DNA of 64,000 bases, taken from Podarcis muralis (taxonomy: Eukaryota). How positions within the stretch are numbered: position 1 is the stretch's first letter; every line of letters starts with the position of its first letter. The stretch spans positions 81,530,001 to 81,594,000 of the forward strand of contig NC_135656.1 in the NCBI RefSeq assembly GCF_964188315.1, written 5' to 3'. Below, piece by piece: positions 6,801-60,606 of the stretch. The notes below the pieces were generated by a model that was given only the letters and a program-made list of their open reading frames with translations, searched no databases and was not told where the DNA came from. The position numbers and the translations under genes were made by a program.

Positions 6801-7380
6801 TGAGGCAGGATGCAACATCATGCTATTAAGATAGTTTCTTCAACGCAAACATTTCTGCTTCCCAGGTGGAACAATCTCCCTACTCTTCCCCTCACCTGTT
6901 GTTCTGGGGTTTTCCCCAATGCCATAGAGTGGATGTGGGAGAAGTATTGGGGGTGCACAGCAGGAGGACAAGGGAATGGGGAGAAAGCCCCATTCTGCTA
7001 GTGGGAGTCTTTACACCAGCTACTGTTAGCACATCGGTTTAATTGAATCCAGCCCATCATAGATACATAATGTGATGTATCCTACGAGGTCATGCCATTA
7101 GTGTAATGACTTTTGCCTGTACAACAGGACTTCCTCTCTCTGATGTTTACCCTTATGTTCCCCAAGCCTCTGGAGCAGATTTGGGGGGACCGGGGCAGGG
7201 GAGAGAGGAAGTTCCATCACACAGACATAAGCCCTTCCACTAATATGTAACCCAAGCAATAGACCTTTTTATCCATTTGCAGAAAAAAAACTTTAAACAA
7301 CAAATGCTAATGTAAGGCCTGCAGCTGAGGACCATATGCACCCTGAGATTTCTTTATTTTAAGTAATTGCCACAGCATGT

Positions 7381-7673
7381 GAAGAAGAAGAAGAAGAAGA
7401 GGAGGAGGAGGAGGAGGAGGAGGAGGAGGAGGAGGAGGAGTTTGGATTTGATATCCCGCTTTATCACTACCCGAAGGAGTCTCAAAGCAGCTAACATTCT
7501 CCTTTCCCTTCCTCCCCCACAACAAACACTCTGTGAGGTGAATGGGGCTGAGAGACTTCAAGAAGTGTGACTAGCCCAAGGTTACCCAGCAGCTGCATGT
7601 GGAGGAGCGGGGAAGCGAACCCGGTTCACCAGATTACGAGTCTACCGCTCTAAACCACTACACCACACCGGCT
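7381..7673 (-). mobile_element. tRNA-derived SINE, Squam3-like, full length with (CCT)n(CTT)n tail
   Basis: Minus strand starts AGCCGGTGTGGTGTAGTGGTT (A box), then GGGTTCGCTTCCC (B box), the body, and a trinucleotide tail at 7381-7440. Confidence 0.85.
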
Positions 7674-9210: not shown

Positions 9211-10604
9211 TATTGAAATTCAATATTATCCAAACCCATTGAAATATCTCTGTAAAGTAGTATCCAACCAGACTAGAGCATGGGTTTAGGCCACATTTTT
9301 TAAATTAAGCAGGCTTTGATCCAGTCATAGGCTAGATAGGGAGGTCTGCTTGGCAACCCCTTGTACACTGGCTTGAGTTCCATGATATAAATATCCCAAG
9401 GTGGGATATAAATGTACTAATGAATTTAAAAGGCACACAATATAACTCTTTACAATACACACAACCCAGCTGTTATAAGCTTTACAAAGAACTGACTGGG
9501 AAACATCCCAATCTAGCTGATTTGTAAGGCATTTATATATTTAGAAATGGCTTGATTTGAGCCTCTTCCCCTTATTACAAAAAATGGTGGTCTGTCTTTT
9601 TTCTTGCCTAGCATATAACTAGAAAGTATAATGAAATGAACATATAGATCACAGGAAAATACATGATTCTTTTTTGCTACAGACTCTCGGTCACATTTCT
9701 TGAGGTGCATCAGCAACAAACATGATTCATAAAAATAATCCAATACATTCAAATAGAACAAAATCATATTAAAATTGAAACCAATGAAAGTGTTCTGAGA
9801 CCTATTTACATGTTAACAGTTGTCACTATTTGTGTCTCTTAATACGTTCCAAATAAATGTTGTATGAAGTGAAGATCCTACGTTATTTCTGTGAAAAGCA
9901 ATTGTAATTTGTTTCAGCAAAGGCCAAGCCAACCCAATGGCAGGGGCATTGATCAATTTGTTTCATTCAGCACAGCAGTGTTTGCAAGAGTAGCATTCCA
10001 GGCCATGGACCTAATTAGGCCCACCAGGCCATTTTGACCATGCCATGCCCTCTTGCCAGTCACCTGGCACCATATAAGATGTCAGGTGTGAACAGGTAAA
10101 AGGTAGCTTGGGTGGGCTAAATGGGCTGCTGAAGCACCTTCGATCAGTTGATCAACAAGGTTTCAGAAGTACTGCATACATGGCTTCTGAAATGCCAATG
10201 ATCAACTGAGCTGCGCTGATGAAGCACCAAAAATCAGCTGATTGCTTGCACTTCAAACTGCAAGCCCTTTGCAAATAACTCTAGGCAGTGCTTTGAAGTC
10301 TTGATGACCAGCTGATAGATGGGGCTTCCAAGCATGGTGTAGGGCTCTTTGCAAGGGCACAATCACCTGACAATTGGGGCTTCAAAGTGCCACATCACCT
10401 GACATCATCAGTCAAATGTTGTCTATTGGGAGTACGAGACATGGCCTGTCAGCTGGATGTGGTTCCCCACCCCTGCCCTATAGGGTCAAATGAGAGGAAC
10501 TAAAGGAGCACACACTAAGACATATTGGGGACAGATCAAATCCCCTTTATCCCTTTATCTGTTGATAGCCCCATCCTTGTGCTGTATTATTGGTCATGCT
10601 ATAG

Positions 10605-10725
10605 CAGGCATAGGCAAACTTTGGGACTACAACTCCCATGATCCCTAGCTAACAGGACCAGTGGTCAGGGATGATGGGAATTGTAGTCCCAAAACATCTG
10701 GAGGGCCGAGGTTTGCTTATGCCTG
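10605..10725. mobile_element. Palindromic hAT MITE with a deletion in its left arm
   Basis: TIR CAGGCATAGGCAAAC / GTTTGCTTATGCCTG. Perfect TSD TGCTATAG. Lacks the CGGCCCTCCAGATGTT segment present in the 14912 copy. Confidence 0.9.
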
Positions 10726-11744
10726 TGCTATAGCATAGCAAAATGTTGGAAAATGACTTTTAAAATCCATCTGTATTTGCCCCCAAGCAAGAGGTGCAGA
10801 AAGAGAAAAGAGGGAAGTTATCTGACATAAGTTGAACATATCTCTATTACCTAGAAAATAAAGAGAATAGTGTTCGAGTCCATGCCACTCAGCTGTGGCT
10901 ACAGAGAATCCAGAAATCGATTTGTAAAAGTAAGAGAAGGGTGTTGATGGACCTACTGGGCGTACAATGTTTGGGTACAATGTCTCCTATCCAGCTGACT
11001 GACCTGAGGCACATGGGCATCATGACTGGAACCCAGGTACTTGGCACCATTGTCTGTGATGAAGTCAGCATCACAAATGGATGATATGTTCATGCTCTGG
11101 GGCTGTTTCCTATGTCTATAGACCTGTGGGAAGAAGCTGTAATGATTAGGCGCATGAGGTCAGAACTATAGGAAGATCAGGGAAGGGAAGAAGCAACAGT
11201 TTTGCACCCTGTTGCTTAAGGGGTAGAAAGCTACACCATACAATCCATGATTCAAGGAAAAGAATCATAACATTGATATGTTTGGAGGGATCCAATACAA
11301 TGCTTACATGGCATGCTCATCTATGAATGACTGAATTCTGAAGGACAAGCTGGTTACTTGCAAAGGGTTGGGTGAGACTGGTATGACTGGCATGGCTAGG
11401 GATGTTTTCCTACTTTGCAAGTAACAGTAACAAAAATCAAGGCTGATACTGTCACACAGTGGGGAACATCCAATAAAGGCTCATTCTAAAGCATCTCTTT
11501 TTCTCATCTACTTTCCCCAGGGTTTCTACAGGAGGAAAAGGTTTGACAATGCATTCCTACTACACACAACACAGCTTTGGCATCTAGGTTATCTGATTAT
11601 GCTTCTCTTTCCTTAATGCATGGACCTAACCATTAGAAACTTAATAGTGACAGAAAAGGATTGCCCCAGCTAAAATAGTTTACCGTAGTCTGTTGGTTGT
11701 TGTATATGCATATTTAAACATGCATTCATTCATTCATTCATTCC

Positions 11745-12694: not shown

Positions 12695-12842
12695 CTGTTG
12701 TTTTAACTGATGGACTAATCTGTCTTTTTCTCTTTTCAAAGCCATCACTTCTTCTTGAGTTTTCTTTTTCTTTGAAGCAGACAGTTCAAGCAAGGCAATA
12801 TTTGCATCTTTTTCACTGATGGCAGCAAGGAGTGCTTCCTGT
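12695..12842 (-). CDS. ERC2: Internal coding exon of ERC2 (ELKS/RAB6-interacting/CAST family member 2), C-terminal coiled-coil region
   Basis: The minus strand reads ...aatcttaccag|A CAG GAA GCA CTC...CAA CAG|gttgga. It is 148 nt: 1 nt plus 49 codons, QEALLAAISEKDANIALLELSASKKKKTQEEVMALKREKDRLVHQLKQQ. This matches the ERC2 peptide as I recall it (SASKKKK, EVMAL, LVHQL). ERC1 has SSSKKK, EVAAL and LVQQL instead. Confidence 0.97.
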
Positions 12843-14911: not shown

Positions 14912-15047
14912 CAGGCATAGGCAAACTCGGCCCTCCATATGTTTTGGGACTACATCTCCCATCATCCCTGACCACTGGTCCTGTCAGCTAGGGATGATGG
15001 GAGTTGTAGTCCCAAAACATCTGGAGGGCCGAGTTTGCCTATGCCTG
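14912..15047. mobile_element. Complete palindromic hAT MITE, 136 bp
   Basis: TIR CAGGCATAGGCAAACTCGGCCCTCCA. Perfect TSD TGTTAGAC (14904-14911, 15048-15055). Arms of about 58 bp are near-perfect inverted repeats. Confidence 0.93.
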
Positions 15048-53181: not shown

Positions 53182-55154
53182 TACTTTTCAAAGTTATTTT
53201 TCAAGTCATCATCTTAAGGAGAAGGTACAAATGCTTCCAACTGGCTACTCACTTCCAGGTCCCAGCAAGGTCAAACAGCTAAAGATGGGAGGATTAACAA
53301 TTACCCCCAAAGGGTTATGTAAATAATGAAGGTTGTCTTCATTCCATTAGTTGCTGTCACAGTTGTCCTATGACACCAGGAATGTGATATGCATAAGTAT
53401 CTCATAGTGTTCTTTCTCTAACTTTGGATGGCATGCCAGCTGCAACAATACTTAGAGAAGAGTTGATCTGGCTTCATTACTTAATGACCAAGTAATACAA
53501 GGATGGTCAAAAACTTAACTCTCATCAGCCCCTGCCTACATGGCCAAAGGTCAAGGATGTTGGGAGTTGTAGTTTAGAAATATCAGGAGGGTGCAGAGTG
53601 GACTACACCTGAACCAATGACATAAGGAAAACAAGACTGTCTTTGAAACCCATTCAAAAACTTGAAATGGAGCAAAACATGGTCCCCGGATTGTTAACTG
53701 ATACTGACCGATGCAAACATTATTCCAATGTTAAAATAGTTGATGTTTGGTGGATTTCTTTTAATACGTTCATCTGGATTCCAGACATTTACCATATTCT
53801 ACTTTTCCAATGGATGTGGTATTTCTATAATTATAAACTTGATGCTATCCTCCATTTATCTGAAGACATTGATTTATTTGTATGCCCGTTTAAACCATAC
53901 TTTATACCTTTTCTAATGATGAAAACACAAAGGGCCACATGCAAAGAACAGAAATAAATGGGTGAGGTGGGGTGGGGTGGGGTGGGCAGAGTGAGATGGT
54001 GAGGGGAAGCTCATTTCTAAAATATTGCCAACTTCAAAATCATTATTTTCTCACAACATTGATTTCAAAATATCTTCTTGAATACAGGAGAAAAGAAAAA
54101 AGCTCAATAGGCTTTCTTGATTTTAGTATTATAGGAACACTCTGACGCCAAATACACTTGGGAAATTCTTAGCAATTCTTAGCAATTTCCTAGGATATGT
54201 GTCAAATGCCAATAGAATAAAATGAATGACTATATTGTTTACAACACTTAGCAAACACTGTACAAGAATTAAACTAAAGTACAACTTGTCCAAGAGGGCT
54301 TAATCCATGAAAGACATAGGAAACCAGCTTAATTTGTCAAGATGGCAGCCATTAGCTCTGAAAGGTTATGCAAATAGAGAAGATGGATGATAAAGTGCAG
54401 GCCACCCCCATTGTGTCAAACATAAATAAACTCTGTACAAAACTGACAGGTAGCTAATTTGTTTTGCAGGGAAGACAGGTAATGGGACACCTCTGTACGC
54501 CACAAGAGACTACATCATGCCTTAATGCAAGTAGCTTTAGATAAAAGTTAGTATTTGGGGGGAAATTAATTATCTGCCATGGTCATAAATAGCTGTTTAG
54601 TACTAAATTGAAACTCAGTTGAAATGCTGGCCTTTTTGAATATTAACAATGCTTCAGAATATGGACTTGCAATGCAACAGGTAAAACTGAGCAATTTTAG
54701 CTAATATATCTGTGACATAAGAAGCTAGCAGAAAACAATGATGCCTTTTCTAACGTTCATGGAGACTTTATAAGGAATCCTTTATTCTAAAAATAATAGT
54801 AATACAGAAAACTATAACAAAAAAATTCAGGTAACTCTTTTCCACTTCCAGTAGCAGCATGAAAGACAACAAACAATCCATGAGAAAAAGCTGCACTGTG
54901 CTATCACTGCATCTCCAGGCAAGAAGAGCCTCACCTATTGAATTTCTGCCTATCATATCAAAGGGCTAATAGCATTGTCAGAGAAAAACACTATGTGAAA
55001 CAGGCAAAAAGCAGATAGAATCAAATTCTGGGCTGTGTTGTGATGTCCTAATAAGTAAATCACTTGGGCATAATTTAAAGCCAAAAGAACAGGAGGGGGC
55101 AATTTTTAACAGGCAACATAATGGGGCTTCAGAAGAATCAGGGATAGAAATATA

Positions 55155-55155
<1 letters not shown>

Positions 55156-55198
<43 letters not shown>
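55156..55198. repeat. (AC)n microsatellite
   Basis: Direct reading. Confidence 0.97.
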
Positions 55199-55200
<2 letters not shown>

Positions 55201-55683
55201 GTTTGTTGTTTAGACTAAAACCCCCACTCAGCCAACAAGTACCATGTCCCACTGCTGTAAGTACTATTGAAACCTATGGAACAAAGCTGGTTCTAAGCCT
55301 GGGCACAAAATGTAATCATACCTTTCCTGATTTAAGTTGACTTAACCTTGGCTTCTTCAGTCTGAATAGACTCAATTACCTCTCCAGGGCAGCTAAAGCC
55401 ATGCAAGTATATTGAATCATAATGCAACAATGAAAACGACTACAAATTCATCATGCTGTCCCTGAACCAGCAAAACAGCTAAGTATATGGTTAATTCTGA
55501 AGTTCCCAAAGATAGGAAACTATGTGCGCTCTTGCTGCACCTTGCTTCGTGCCCTGAATGCGAGCTTTCTAAGGATATCTGCCTCCCCAGTATTGGAAAC
55601 AGCAAGCTGTAAAACATGGGAATTTGGTATGATCCAGCGGGCCTTTTTATGGCCATATGTGTTACTGCAGAATGATATACTTA

Positions 55684-56033
55684 GGTAAGGGTAAAGGGGA
55701 CCCCTGACCATTAGGTCCAGTCGTGGCCGACTCTGGGGTTGTGGCGCTCATCTCGCTTTATTGGCCGAGGGAGCCGGCGTACAGCTTCCAGGTCATGTGG
55801 CCAGCATGAATAAGCCGCTTCTGGTGAACCAGAGCAGTGCACGGAAACGCCGTTTACCTTCCCGCTGGAGCGGTACCTATTTATCTACTTGCACTTTGAT
55901 GTGCTTTTGAACTGCTAGGTTGGCAGGAGCAGGGACCGAGCAACGGGAGCTCACCCCGTTGCGGGGATTTGAACCGCCAACCTTCTGATAGGCAAGTCCT
56001 AGGCTCTGTGGTTTAACCCACAACGCCACCCGC
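55684..56033 (-). mobile_element. Sauria SINE (Squam1)
   Basis: The reverse complement reads GCGGGTGGCGTTGTGGGTTAAACCACAGAGCCTAGGACTTGCC ... TAATGGTCAGGGGTCCCCTTTACCCTTACC. Confidence 0.93.
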
Positions 56034-57291
56034 ATAACAAATGACAACAGCTGGAGGAGGGGAAATACAGATTACACTGAAAAGGTGGCCACCCTCTTAT
56101 TTTCCTACTTGAAAGAAGGTGATCACTCCAGCCCATTGTACTGGCTACCCACTACAATGTGAATACAAGACAGCCACAATGGTCTGGGTAAAGTTAGGAA
56201 AACATGGCTGGTGTGTTGGAAAACAATTGAACAACATCGAGGTGACACCACAGCAGGAAGCCCTAAAGCCAAGGAAGGAAGAGAAAGAGTAATGAAATAA
56301 TAATTCTTCTACTGAGCACTGCTAACTCACACCTCTTCTCCTTCAGGAAAGATGCGGAAATTCAACCTGATTAATCATTTCACAAAGTCATTAAAATGAG
56401 CAGAGAATAAAGCAGGTTGCCAATTGCCTCCTATGAACTTTTGTCGACTAGTACTTCCCAAAATGCTGGCCAGCAAGGCCAGGAAAGGATATGGTACCAC
56501 AGGAAATGTGTCTCTGAAGTTTCCCTAATGAGGAAGGGGCTTACTAGGTTCTTGCTGCTATTATGTTCAATTGTAATTTTATGAGCTGATACACTTGTGG
56601 GAAGAAAAGAGACAGACACTCTTCTGGCAGATTAGTTAGCCCTTTAAGGGGTCTGCTGTTAATTTTGATTATTCATCTGCACATCTGTCTTTGCCCAACT
56701 GTGACATGAATACAACTCCTTACCGCTAACTCCATTTAATCAGAAGCTTGTCTCCAAAGAAATCTGTCAGCTTGTTTGACCTCTTAACAGATCTGCATCT
56801 AGAGTTACAATCTAGTTCAAAGTCAGATCTCACATTTCCAACAGCTTGGATAAAGGGAGAACTTTGGCTTCCACCTATCTGGGCCTGATAGCTTCTGACC
56901 CCCTCCCTGGCCACCCCCAGTCACCACCTACTGATAGCTTGCATTTTTGAAATGGCATTTTGAGCTGCAAGACTGACAATTGCTCCAGAACTCGGGATAC
57001 AACCAAAGAAAATAAATGCATTACATAGATACCAAAAAGTCACCCTCTCTTCAGATATTTAACAGTTCATTGTATCATAATAATTTCCCTCCTTTCTTGT
57101 ATTGCTTGACTATCTCCCAGAGAAATGTAAGCTGAAACATTTGAACATTCATCTCAGGCTATTCATTCACTTGATATGTTCTCTGAAAGTTTTAAAGCGG
57201 GGTATTACACAGTTCAGTTAAACCTCAAAATTAACTTATTTTAAGCAGTAATTACCTCTTTTTGAGTGATCTGCAGTTGAGCTGTCAGGAG

Positions 57292-57509
57292 CATAGCTGT
57301 CAACCTTCCCTTTTTTTTGCGGGTAATTCCCTTATTACAGCGCCGTTTCCCACTATACCGGATTGTTAGATATCCCATAGACTGTCTCCGGGACAGGTGA
57401 GGCTGCTGATCCCTTATTTTCAAATCCAAAAGTTGACAGCTATGCCGCTGGTCCCTTATTTTCGAGGCTGCTGATCCCTTATTTTCAAATCTGAAAGTTG
57501 ACAGCTATG
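57292..57509. mobile_element. hAT-type MITE of the 6353 family, with two right ends
   Basis: Left TIR CATAGCTGTCAAC. Right TIR GTTGACAGCTATG ends at 57444 and again at 57509. Outer flanks GTCAGGAG / GTCGGGAA (6 of 8). Confidence 0.85.
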
Positions 57510-57706
57510 GTCGGGAACTGTTTATCAGAAGGTGGGGGTAGTGAGACTAAACAGGTATTTGTCCCACTCCTGTGGCAGCGAGGTAAATATTAAGATTAGT
57601 TAAGGTAACAGGTGAGCACACAGGCACCTTTGGAGGCGAAGAGGGCTTCTGGAGGCCAGCTGCTCTGGGTTGTGGGCCCTGATCCTGAATATGAAATGTT
57701 CTTGAG

Positions 57707-57866
57707 CAGGCATCCCGAAACTCGGCCCTCCAGATGTTTTAGGACTACAATTCCTGATCAAGGTGTCCCCCCTGCCAGGTAAGTATGGGACTACTGGTCC
57801 TGTTAGCTAGGGATGATGGGAGCTGTAGTCCCAAATTATCTGGAGGGCCGAGTTTGGGGATTCCTG
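57707..57866. mobile_element. Palindromic hAT MITE related to 10605/14912, interrupted by a U1 fragment
   Basis: Termini CAGGCATCCCGAAACTCGGCCCTCCAGA / TCTGGAGGGCCGAGTTTGGGGATTCCTG. TSD TTCTTGAG / TTCCTGAG (7 of 8). Confidence 0.88.
57753..57786 (-). pseudogene. 3'-truncated U1 snRNA fragment, nt 1-34
   Basis: Minus strand reads ATACTTACCTGGCAGGGGGGACACCTTGATCAGG. Human U1 as recalled is ATACTTACCTGGCAGGGGAGATACCATGATCACG: 30 of 34 identical, ungapped, first 18 nt identical. No U1 promoter, Sm site or 3' box is present. Confidence 0.85.
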
Positions 57867-60041
57867 TTCCTGAGGCTCATTTGATGCACCAGCCTGGAAT
57901 TTTAGGGCCCAGGTAGGAAGGCCACCCTATTCACCATAAGGTGGGGCCGGGGCTTTGGGCCTATGCATTGCCATGTACTTTGGAAAGAGGAGGGTTTGGC
58001 TTGCCATGGTTGAAATTAAGTTAGCTTCCTGCTCTTCTCATTTCTCCTCTAAGTATTAAAAATAAAATGCCACCCAAGTTCAACCCTTCATTAGTGTTTC
58101 ACCTCCTGGGTCCAGTCACAAAAGTACTTTGGATCTGCTGATGTCTGAATGGAACATTTTAAAAATAAGTCAGTGGGAATCAGCCTGGGCTAATACACAC
58201 CAGGCTGTTTTGCATACTTTAATATTGAAAGTCACTTCATCTGCTGATACAACACCACCCCAGAAAAGTATATAAAGATGGGGTCCTAAAACAGTGTTAT
58301 TAAACTATTCATTCAGTTCTACTGAAATGTGTGTAAATGTGAAAGCTGTTAAAAAGGGATTAATTGTTGTCCACGCTACTAAGATATTAGTGTAAAATGA
58401 CCTCAAGGTTTAAAAGCACCATATGAAGGGGAGAACAGTAATCTTGCTCTGCTGCTCCTAATGAATAACAAATGGGCCTTCACAATTTATTTAGTTCAAT
58501 ACAAGCTGACATTACAACTCATTCTGCTGGGTCTTTTTTCTTCTTCTTCTAAACTCTGTGGTAATGCATCATCTTGCCTGGCTGTATGTCATCTTCTAGA
58601 AGGTCAACAAAGGTATGTGCCCCCCCCCCCATGTTTAAGTTATGAAAAACTTTGACAAAGCCTGGACTAGCCTGCTCTGTTTTATTCTTGCTGACATCTT
58701 TGACTCACATTCTTCTAATGGAGCATCTAACATTTTTTATAAATAAGTCTTTTTACCTGATAAATAAATTTAAAAACCCCCACACAAAAATATATACTGG
58801 GTATTTTTGTGCCTTAAAATACAGTATCTTCAACCTGGATGTTTAAATGAGCATTATAAAGCATACTGCTATTTATTGTCATTTCAAAGGTACTTAGAAA
58901 TATGTATTATGTTGCTGTGGACAATTAGCCTTTTATCCAATTTTACTTGATAGTTTAAACTCTCCCACCCTAAGGTTTTAATTATCCCTCTCAGCCAGCC
59001 CTCTTAGGCCTCGGTTCATGCAGCTGGCAATCTGCCTCAGTGATGTTATAACCTTGTTAACGTAACAAAAGAGGAGTTTACTTAAAACTGTACTGACTAT
59101 GGACTTAAGCCAAATTTACTTGAAAGAGGAAAGAGACTGTCAAAAATCCTACAGTAAACATAGGAAAGCAGTTCTTTCATAACCTTCACCTTAATTCATA
59201 TAGACAAGTAATTTACATGTAAGTGGATTCATATGGTCTGGAAGGGGGCCTCCCCCTAGAGCCGGACTGCTTCATGTCCCCTCCCCATCCTGCACTCTCT
59301 TTTCAGAGAATTGCAAGGTTTACCAGAAGACAGAGCATCTGCAGGGTTTGAATCACAACAAATTATAAGGTAAACATTTATAAAACTAGTCAGCATCAAT
59401 ATGAACAGAATGAATTTCACCAAGCCATTTCCAAATCCAGGCAGCCCTCTTGTCAAAACCATTGTTTACATTCAGTAAAGACTTCTATGTCGAGAGTGTA
59501 AAGTTGCATTACTCTAATGAAGTAATGGTTACATTACCCTAAAATGTAAGTGGCTTGTCAAATTCTGATATCCCCCATTCATTTAATGACCACATTACAG
59601 TCAGAATTTCCTAAATCTGTTTAATTAAAATCATTTTTTTAGGTTATACACCAATAGAACCTTATGTTAAGTTAGACTAAACAAAATATCGCTGGACGAA
59701 TATGGAAATCTTCATGGAGCTGGGACCCTAAGCACACTAATGTGAAAGTGAATTCTACTGAATTTTCAAGTATGCTCTTCTCAGATCATGATATAAAAAG
59801 TAGGAAAGACAGGTGTGCAAACTCATTGCAACTATGAATGAAACTTTGACCTACACAGATATTTTCAAGGGATATTTGTTTACTTAAAAGTGTTTCTAGA
59901 ATGCTTAATGTTTTAAAATCTGTTAAGTGATATCTAAAAATAAAAAGTGTCATAAAAACAAAGATACAACATAAAACTGGTATGAGCAGTATTATAAACT
60001 TGTTATTCAGTTATAGCAAGGTCTAATACATGGAGCAAGGA

Positions 60042-60083
60042 ATGAAATCTAAATGAGAAACTATGAAATCTAAATGAGAAACT
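60042..60083. repeat. 21-bp exact tandem duplication
   Basis: ATGAAATCTAAATGAGAAACT occurs twice. Confidence 0.95.
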
Positions 60084-60606
60084 CACAATGGAAGCATTCA
60101 AAATGCAAATTTACCAAGTTCAAACCTATCAAATACTCTGAATATTGAATGGCCTCAAGCCATCCATGCTGATCTGTGGCAATGCCTCTGTTAGGCCCTA
60201 GATGTTGAGCTGCCAGGAAGGAAACCTAACTTTCCTTGGCTTCCAATATACCTAATATGGTGGCATGTAGGATATAGGCTAGCTGAAACTCATTAAAAGT
60301 CACAAGGGATATTTTAAGCAGGGAAGGCAGATTAGGCATTGCTAACCAAGAGGTTGTTCCATGGAAATATGGGGTGGGTGGGTGGAGGAAAATGATTTTA
60401 TACATACAGTTTTAAGGGATAAATATCATCTATCAGATGTATTCCAATGGCAATATCTGCAGCTACAACATCTTGCAATAACAATGTTTGGATCAGACCA
60501 GAAAATATTTAGAATCTATTGAATTCCATTATGTTTGTGTAGAAAAGGACTGTCTAACACAGTTGTTTGTTGGTGATGTAATAAGAATAATTCCTCTTTG
60601 AAAAGT

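What the first reader, a model, noticed from the sequence alone, without database searches (positions are those of the whole stretch)
57753..57786. 5' end of U1 snRNA captured inside a MITE hairpin, without TSD or poly(A)
Seen: U1 nt 1-34, starting exactly at the U1 5' end and stopping in the stem-loop I loop, sits in the left arm of a palindromic MITE. It replaces roughly 10 nt (CATCATCCCT) found in sister copies. GGACTAC occurs on both sides but 4 nt away from the left junction, so it is not a clean TSD. The MITE itself has a 7 of 8 TSD. Established: 3'-truncated snRNA retrocopies are known in mammals, and RNA-derived fragments can be patched into double-strand breaks. Inference: repair of a break at the hairpin using U1-derived cDNA. 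On the ERC2 strand the intron RNA reads AUACUUACCUG, complementary to 5' splice sites, while the antisense strand gains a perfect CAG|GTAAGTAT donor. If other copies carry it, this is a DNA transposon spreading a U1 mimic and portable splice donor.
Basis: partly seen in the sequence, partly recalled or inferred. Interest (0 to 1): 0.75.

Follow-up and report, generated by a model that had tools for sequence, protein, structure and literature searches.

The report
U1 RNA fragment patched into transposon
The first 36 bases of the U1 splicing RNA really are embedded in a small hairpin transposon in an intron of a lizard ERC-family gene, most likely an accidental RNA-copied repair patch of a known kind and not a working device.

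Summary
Window 57751-57786 (minus strand) is U1 snRNA nt 1-36: Rfam U1, 28.8 bits, E 5e-6, cut in the stem-loop I loop. It lies in the left arm of a 160-nt palindromic MITE (57707-57866) with an 8-bp TSD that matches 7 of 8.

Alignment with three sister copies shows that 34 nt replace the family's CATCATCCCT. These 34 nt are 32 nt of U1 plus GG. TTCC at the other junction is shared by the MITE and U1 nt 33-36. The second GGACTAC is native MITE sequence, not a TSD.

The polarity fits one mechanism. A DNA 3' end ...AATTCC paired with GGAA in the single-stranded U1 loop. A reverse transcriptase extended it to the RNA's 5' end, and the product was rejoined with a 10-bp loss. These are the published hallmarks of 3'-truncated ("tailless") snRNA retrocopies and of endonuclease-independent, break-repair retro-insertions.

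Genome copy number and antisense splicing are therefore untested. The "mobile U1 mimic / portable donor" idea stays unsupported and is judged unlikely.

Earlier notes of this scan report tailless U2 and 7SK retrocopies on other DNA of this genome.

The parts
57751..57786 (-). U1 snRNA nt 1-36: 5' single-stranded end, helix H strand, 5' half and loop of stem-loop I. Nt 33-36 (57751-57754) overlap the MITE sequence TTCC.
   Evidence: Rfam RF00003 truncated match, 28.8 bits, E 5e-6, model positions 1-36. Exact 18-mer is unique in the window.
57755..57788 (+). The 34 nt absent from sister copies: complement of U1 nt 32-1 plus two extra bases GG (57787-57788). They replace the family's CATCATCCCT.
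   Evidence: Alignment A1 with three sister copies. Pairwise alignments.
57707..57866 (.). Palindromic non-coding MITE, 160 nt (136-nt family length minus 10 plus 34). It has its own subfamily termini on both arms.
   Evidence: Inverted repeat I1. 84-89 % identity to sister copies. DNA hairpin MFE -46.3 against -70.9 kcal/mol for the intact sister.
57699..57706 (.). Left target-site duplication TTCTTGAG
   Evidence: Read directly. 7 of 8 match with the right copy. The sister copies have perfect 8-bp TSDs.
57867..57874 (.). Right target-site duplication TTCCTGAG
   Evidence: Read directly.
57776..57786 (+). Consensus 5' splice-site string CAG|GTAAGTAT, the complement of U1 nt 1-11. It lies on the strand antisense to the host gene. 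No evidence of use.
   Evidence: Sequence. Gene strand from the exon at 12695-12842.
12695..12842 (-). Coding exon of the host ERC/CAST-family gene, with AG acceptor and GT donor. It fixes the gene's strand. The U1-MITE lies about 45 kb upstream of it in gene orientation.
   Evidence: Pfam PF10174 Cast, E 1.3e-28, profile positions 710-760. PDB ERC1 8ij9_C, E 7e-19. Splice sites read.

Best explanation
This is a one-off RNA-templated patch. Within an already inserted hAT-like palindromic MITE, a free plus-strand DNA 3' end ...GGACTACAATTCC paired through its last four bases with GGAA (nt 33-36) in the single-stranded loop of stem-loop I of a U1 snRNA. A reverse-transcribing polymerase extended it along the RNA and ran off at the RNA's 5' end (...AAGTAT). 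That polymerase was a LINE ORF2-type RT, with a repair polymerase such as Pol theta as the alternative. Two extra bases (GG) were added, and the end was rejoined to the other side of the break with loss of 10 nt (CATCATCCCT).

The result is a tailless, TSD-less U1 retro-fragment. It is most likely inert and sits in sense orientation in an intron of an ERC-family gene.

Shown: the U1 identity, the boundaries, the 10-nt replacement, the 4-nt overlap, the lack of poly(A) and TSD, and the gene strand.

Inferred: the RNA template rather than a DNA template, the enzyme, the single-locus status and the lack of function. What made the free 3' end is left open: a break at the hairpin, a LINE endonuclease nick, or interrupted gap repair after MITE excision.
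For: - U1 nt 1-36 with truncation in the stem-loop I loop.
- The insertion boundaries are defined independently by alignment to sister MITE copies. They coincide with U1 nt 1 (plus 2 nt) and with a 4-nt U1/MITE overlap.
- The polarity is self-consistent. The microhomology lies at the end where cDNA synthesis must start, and the extra bases lie where it must stop.
- Doucet et al. 2015 (PMC4476161) report that 3'-truncated snRNA pseudogenes begin at nt 1, are truncated in single-stranded purine-rich segments and show complementarity at the 3' junction.
- Sen et al. 2007 (PMC1920257) report endonuclease-independent retro-insertions without TSDs. In their set, 18 of 21 had target deletions, and they describe junction microhomology, filler bases and co-opted cellular RNAs.
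- No other U1-like piece and no second copy of this MITE subfamily exists in the 64 kb. The three other family copies lack the piece.
- Unchecked notes of this scan report tailless U2 and 7SK retrocopies elsewhere in this genome. An RT able to do this therefore seems to be active in the lineage.
Against: - Single-locus status rests on priors.
- The pre-insertion state is inferred from paralogous copies of a different subfamily (84-89 % identity). The exact deleted bases, and the status of GG, could therefore be subfamily features.
- The species' own U1 genes were not available. An exact identity, and the gene's upstream bases, could not be compared.
- 70-100 % of published tailless snRNA retrocopies have TSDs. 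This one does not.
- The nick site ACAATTCC/CATC does not resemble the L1 TTTT/A site.
Confidence: 0.6

Rival explanations
1. The same capture chemistry, but it happened in a master copy. On this reading the U1-bearing element is a multicopy MITE subfamily that spread by transposition, scattering a U1 5' end on one strand and a consensus splice donor on the other.
For: - The copy has intact termini and a TSD, and it belongs to a subfamily (termini TCCCGAAAC/TCCCCAAAC on both arms) not otherwise seen in the window. The insert could therefore be a subfamily trait.
- Lizard hAT (hobo) non-autonomous elements are reported to capture extraneous DNA and amplify it (PMC3014272).
- An unchecked note of this scan reports a loaded hAT element at 10-20 copies in this genome.
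Against: - The insert breaks the palindrome on one arm only, whereas the subfamily's diagnostic changes are symmetrical.
- The hairpin is much weakened, at -46 against -71 kcal/mol.
- The arms are only 84 % complementary and the TSD is degraded. This looks like an old lone copy, not a member of a recent burst.
- None of the other family copies in the window carries the piece.
- There is no direct count either way.
Confidence: 0.15
2. DNA-templated filler. During break repair or abortive gap repair after MITE excision, a 3' end invaded a U1 gene or pseudogene by microhomology, copied about 36 nt of DNA, and re-annealed through TTCC/GGAA. On this reading the start at +1 is a coincidence of microhomology (CC) with the gene's -2/-1.
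For: - Filler DNA and interrupted gap repair are the classical source of internal rearrangements in hAT-type elements (PMC3014272).
- Two unexplained bases lie just upstream of U1 nt 1. They could be U1-gene flank.
Against: - The homology starts at the mature RNA's first base and stops in a single-stranded RNA loop. Both features are expected for an RNA template and unexplained for DNA.
- The pattern matches published RNA-derived tailless snRNA copies (PMC4476161).
Confidence: 0.1
3. Classical endonuclease-dependent TPRT by template choice. This would be an ordinary tailless U1 retropseudogene in which second-strand cleavage fell upstream and gave a 10-bp target deletion instead of a TSD. It shares the RNA-templated core of the best explanation and differs only in what made the nick.
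For: - Start at nt 1, truncation in a purine-rich single-stranded loop and 3'-junction complementarity, exactly as in Doucet et al. 2015.
- Up to 30 % of the copies in that study lack TSDs.
- Unchecked notes report tailless U2 and 7SK copies with 11-17-bp TSDs in this genome.
Against: - No TSD.
- The nick site ACAATTCC/CATC is unlike TTTT/A.
- The reported tailless copies elsewhere in this genome do have TSDs.
Confidence: 0.2
4. The piece has been put to use. Either it is an intronic RNA segment that masks 5' splice sites of the host pre-mRNA, or it is a U1-binding donor for an antisense transcript.
For: Only the sequence itself. On the gene strand there are 11 nt complementary to the consensus 5' splice site, and on the other strand a perfect CAG|GTAAGTAT.
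Against: - No Sm site, no complete stem-loop I and no promoter elements, so it is far below the U1 gathering score (28.8 against 69.5 bits).
- It lies deep in a long intron, about 45 kb from the next exon found.
- No conservation or expression data could be obtained.
Confidence: 0.03

Closest known systems
3'-truncated ('tailless') snRNA retropseudogenes: Denison and Weiner class III, Group III of Doucet et al. 2015 (PMC4476161)
   Same: It begins at snRNA nt 1 and is truncated in a single-stranded purine-rich segment (here the stem-loop I loop). It has short complementarity between target DNA and RNA at the 3' junction (4 nt) and no poly(A).
   Different: It has no TSD but a 10-bp target deletion. 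The nick site is unlike the L1 consensus. It is only 36 nt long, and it is in a lizard and inside a MITE.
Endonuclease-independent (non-classical) LINE-RT insertions at DNA breaks: Sen et al. 2007 (PMC1920257)
   Same: No TSD, a small target deletion, a 3'-truncated insert without an A-tail, junction microhomology, a few filler bases, and cellular RNAs that can be co-opted.
   Different: The insert holds no LINE sequence at all, only the snRNA piece. No ancestral empty site has been verified.
Filler-DNA capture by hAT-type non-autonomous elements through interrupted gap repair, for example the lizard hobo elements of Novick et al. 2011 (PMC3014272)
   Same: Foreign sequence sits between intact transposon ends with a TSD, together with a small internal deletion.
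   Different: The cargo is 32-36 nt and looks RNA-derived. Amplification of the loaded element is not shown.
SINEU, the U1/U2-headed SINEs of crocodilians that insert into a Mariner MITE: Kojima 2015 (PMC4494074)
   Same: A U1 5' sequence is found inside a DNA-transposon-derived repeat in a sauropsid.
   Different: Here there is no SINE body, no poly(A) tail and no second copy in the window. SINEU was reported in crocodilians only.

Membership tests
U1 spliceosomal RNA gene (Rfam RF00003) | Full-length RNA of about 164 nt reaching the family's gathering score (69.5 bits), with stem-loops I-IV and an Sm site | tested here: not met
   Only model positions 1-36 are matched, at 28.8 bits. There is no hit at gathering threshold in the whole window.
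Tailless 3'-truncated snRNA retropseudogene | Starts at nt 1 of the mature snRNA | tested here: met
   Model position 1 aligns to 57786. The MITE sequence resumes 2 nt beyond it.
Tailless 3'-truncated snRNA retropseudogene | Truncation in a single-stranded, purine-rich RNA segment, with complementarity to the target at the 3' junction | tested here: met
   The match ends in the loop columns of stem-loop I (GAUCAGGAA). TTCC is shared with the MITE family sequence.
Tailless 3'-truncated snRNA retropseudogene | Flanking target-site duplication (present in 70-100 % of published cases) | tested here: not met
   The flanking GGACTAC pair is native MITE sequence. Ten bases of the target are lost instead.
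Tailless 3'-truncated snRNA retropseudogene | LINE-endonuclease-like first-strand cleavage site (TTTT/A type) | tested here: not met
   The inferred nick context is ACAATTCC/CATC. The site preferences of this lizard's LINEs are unknown.
Endonuclease-independent RT-mediated break repair (NCLI type) | No TSD, a target deletion, a 3'-truncated insert without an A-tail, and junction microhomology or filler bases | tested here: met
   All four features are read from alignment A1. The hallmarks are as listed in PMC1920257.
Endonuclease-independent RT-mediated break repair (NCLI type) | Ancestral empty site verified in an outgroup or another allele | not testable with these tools
Paralogous MITE copies were used as a proxy.
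hAT-like palindromic MITE | Terminal inverted repeats, 8-bp TSD, no coding capacity, multiple copies | tested here: met
   Arms. 8-bp TSDs in three copies. 136-160 nt long. Four copies in the window. Superfamily assignment rests on TSD length only.
SINEU (U1/U2-headed SINE) | snRNA-derived head followed by a SINE body and a poly(A) tail, present as a repeat family | tested here: not met
   The MITE sequence resumes directly after U1 nt 36. There is no A-tail and only one U1-like site in the window.

The most novel reading that the evidence does not exclude
The U1 5' end was captured by a master MITE that then transposed. The lizard genome would then hold a subfamily of cut-and-paste elements that scatter a perfect consensus splice donor on one strand and a splice-site-complementary RNA segment on the other, through introns, with measurable effects on splicing or premature-termination control.
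Probability: 0.05. Interest if true: 0.65.

Novelty: new member of a known kind. Interest (0 to 1): 0.22.

Why it matters
As it stands, this is a clean single-locus example, in a reptile, of a small nuclear RNA being copied into a DNA break. Both junctions can be read: priming by 4-nt microhomology in an RNA loop, and run-off at the RNA's 5' end. It adds to the evidence that tailless snRNA retro-fragments are not confined to mammals, and that they can arise without a target-site duplication. It would become more interesting only if the loaded MITE turned out to be multicopy, because that would be a DNA transposon distributing ready-made U1 binding sites.

Tried and rejected
1. Rfam scan of 55000-60500 at E up to 10 found no U1, because internal truncated matches are not scored. 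A scan with the stretch ending at the truncation point found it.
2. The TSD reading of the GGACTAC pair is rejected. The left copy continues with AATTCC, which is family sequence, and the right copy is the family's own centre (GACCACTGG in the sisters).
3. Self-priming of U1, as proposed for U3 pseudogenes, was considered and dropped. From my own knowledge of the U1 sequence, its 3' end could pair only near nt 12-18, which would give about 12 nt and not 36. This was not tested with a tool.
4. The SINEU or other repeat-consensus reading is rejected for lack of a SINE body, an A-tail or a second copy.
For openness: one whole-window Rfam scan and local folding and scripts did include it.
6. Findings look-ups for 'U1 snRNA MITE' and 'ERC2' were blank.
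7. A search for a second copy of this MITE subfamily in the window found none.
8. Tandem Repeats Finder on 56800-58600 returned nothing.
9. Comparison with the species' own U1 genes was not possible. The figures of 30/34 identity to human U1 and 34/36 to chicken U1 rest on sequences recalled from memory and are not used as evidence.

Full report
**What is there**

The plus strand at 57751-57786 is the reverse complement of the first 36 nt of U1 snRNA. A broad Rfam scan of 55000-60500 did not report it, because Infernal scores truncated matches only at the ends of a stretch. With the stretch starting at 57751, RF00003 (U1) matches 57786-57751 on the minus strand to model positions 1-36 of 166. 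The score is 28.8 bits, with E 5e-6 for the 150 nt searched. Every conserved consensus position is matched. On the model's structure line the match ends inside the loop of stem-loop I. The score is far below the gathering score of 69.5 bits, so this is a fragment and not a gene. The exact 18-mer ATACTTACCTGGCAGGGG occurs once in the window. No U1 gene or other U1-like piece is present in the 64 kb.

**The carrier**

The fragment lies in a palindromic element whose arms are 57704-57754 and 57819-57869.
- The element proper is 57707-57866.
- It is flanked by TTCTTGAG (57699-57706) and TTCCTGAG (57867-57874), a 7-of-8 target-site duplication.
- The same family occurs at 14912-15047 (136 nt, perfect 8-bp TSD TGTTAGAC, nearly perfect hairpin) and at 10604-10727 (TSD TGCTATAG, with a 17-nt deletion in one arm). 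A decayed copy lies near 600-760.
- The 8-bp TSD suggests a hAT-type MITE. No transposase link was tested.
- The U1-bearing copy is 84-89 % identical to these sisters. It has different subterminal bases on both arms (TCCCGAAAC / TCCCCAAAC against TAGGCAAAC), so it belongs to another subfamily. No second member of that subfamily is in the window.

**The junctions**

In alignment A1 and the pairwise alignments, the sisters read ...GGACTACAATTCC-CATCATCCCT-GACCACTGGTCC.... This copy reads ...GGACTACAATTCC-[34 nt]-GACTACTGGTCC....
- The 34 nt (57755-57788) are the complement of U1 nt 32-1 followed by GG.
- TTCC (57751-57754) belongs both to the MITE and to U1 (nt 33-36, GGAA).
- The element length is 160 = 136 - 10 + 34.
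The left copy and the AATTCC after it are family sequence, and the right copy is the family's centre.
- The insert removes ten bases that pair in the hairpin. The predicted single-strand DNA hairpin drops from -70.9 kcal/mol in the intact sister to -46.3 kcal/mol here.

**How it most likely arose**

The polarity of the junctions fits a single mechanism.
1. U1 cDNA is the plus strand, so synthesis must have started at TTCC and ended at ...AAGTAT.
2. The overlap lies exactly at the start. A plus-strand 3' end ...AATTCC can pair with GGAA in the single-stranded loop of stem-loop I.
3. The homology stops exactly at the first base of the mature RNA, where a polymerase copying RNA would run off.
4. 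The two unexplained bases lie at that run-off end.

A DNA template would explain neither the stop at +1 nor the start in an RNA loop. This is inference from the anatomy, not a demonstration.

The pattern matches the published description of 3'-truncated snRNA pseudogenes. Those have truncations clustered in single-stranded purine-rich segments, complementarity to the target at the 3' junction, and no poly(A). It is explained there as LINE-1 RT 'template choice' (PMC4476161, section read). In that study 70-100 % of such copies had TSDs. This one instead has a 10-bp target deletion, and the nick context ACAATTCC/CATC is unlike TTTT/A.

These deviations are the hallmarks of endonuclease-independent retro-insertions at pre-existing breaks. 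In Sen et al. 2007 these show no TSD, target deletions (18 of 21 loci), junction microhomology, filler bases and occasional co-opted cellular RNAs (PMC1920257).

Three things could have made the free 3' end, and one locus cannot separate them:
- a LINE endonuclease nick with an upstream second cut;
- interrupted gap repair after excision of the MITE. This is the classical source of deletion-plus-filler derivatives of hAT elements, and lizard hobo elements are reported to incorporate filler DNA (PMC3014272).

**Context**

A 148-nt exon with AG and GT boundaries at 12695-12842 on the minus strand encodes QEALLAAISEKDANIALLELSASKKKKTQEEVMALKREKDRLVHQLKQQ.
- It matches Pfam Cast (PF10174), E 1.3e-28, profile positions 710-760.
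- It matches the solved ERC1 fragment 8ij9_C with four differences.
- From memory, those differences are the ERC2 residues. The paralogue was not tested further.
- The window's T/A skew of -0.036 on the plus strand agrees with minus-strand transcription.

The gene therefore runs on the minus strand.

**Function**

Nothing supports a function.
- The piece lacks the 3' half of stem-loop I, the Sm site, stem-loops II-IV and any snRNA promoter. It therefore cannot assemble a U1 snRNP.
- On the gene strand it is merely 11 nt complementary to 5' splice sites, deep in a long intron.
- The donor on the other strand matters only if that strand is transcribed.

**What could not be done**

- One whole-window Rfam scan and local folding and scripts did include it.

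As a result, three things are untested: the number of loci carrying the two MITE-U1 junctions, presence or absence in other individuals or species, and antisense splicing at 57778/57779. The species' own U1 genes were also out of reach.

**Leads from this scan**

These are unchecked AI notes. The same lizard genome is reported to hold:
- a tailless U2 copy of 32-36 nt with an 11-bp TSD;
- a tailless 7SK copy (nt 1-52) with a 17-bp TSD;
- U2 pieces at LINE junctions;
- hAT elements loaded with host DNA, one of them estimated at 10-20 copies;
- a tRNA gene captured in a hAT MITE with no sign of spread.

They make both halves of the story plausible, RT copying of small RNAs and hAT capture. They do not decide between a local event and a spreading subfamily.

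**Verdict**

An RNA-derived U1 patch is the best reading (0.6). The hairpin as the cause of the break is unproven. The 'mobile U1 mimic / portable donor' idea is untested and unlikely, at about 0.15 for multicopy and about 0.05 for multicopy with an effect. It is a new member of a known kind, tailless snRNA retro-fragments or RT-mediated break repair. Interest is low to moderate.

Noticed in passing
window 12695-12842 (-): Coding exon of an ERC/CAST-family gene (Pfam Cast positions 710-760) with AG/GT boundaries. It differs from solved ERC1 at four positions, so it is probably ERC2.
   Followed up: partly
window 35629-35687 (-): Partial tRNA match (Rfam RF00005, 35.8 bits, model positions 8-63). 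It is probably the head of a tRNA-derived SINE and not a gene.
   Followed up: no
window 10604-10727: Sister MITE copy with a 17-nt deletion in one arm (TCGGCCCTCCAGATGTT missing). It is a second example of internal damage in this palindromic family.
   Followed up: partly
window 57399-57510: A 46-nt segment (gaggctgctgatcccttattttcaaatc...gacagctatg) occurs twice, 65 nt apart, just upstream of the MITE. Tandem Repeats Finder did not report it.
   Followed up: no
window 7357-7567: Long purine/pyrimidine low-complexity tract, with poly-A and GAA-type runs that give poly-K/R/E ORFs in several frames.
   Followed up: no
window 55140-55250: (GT)n microsatellite. It produced a spurious weak SCARNA7 hit in the Rfam E-value scan.
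   Followed up: no
window 57723-57850 (+): The MITE hairpin gives weak sub-threshold matches to the miRNA precursor families mir-1460 and mir-5408 (21-22 bits). This suggests those families derive from related palindromic repeats.
   Followed up: no
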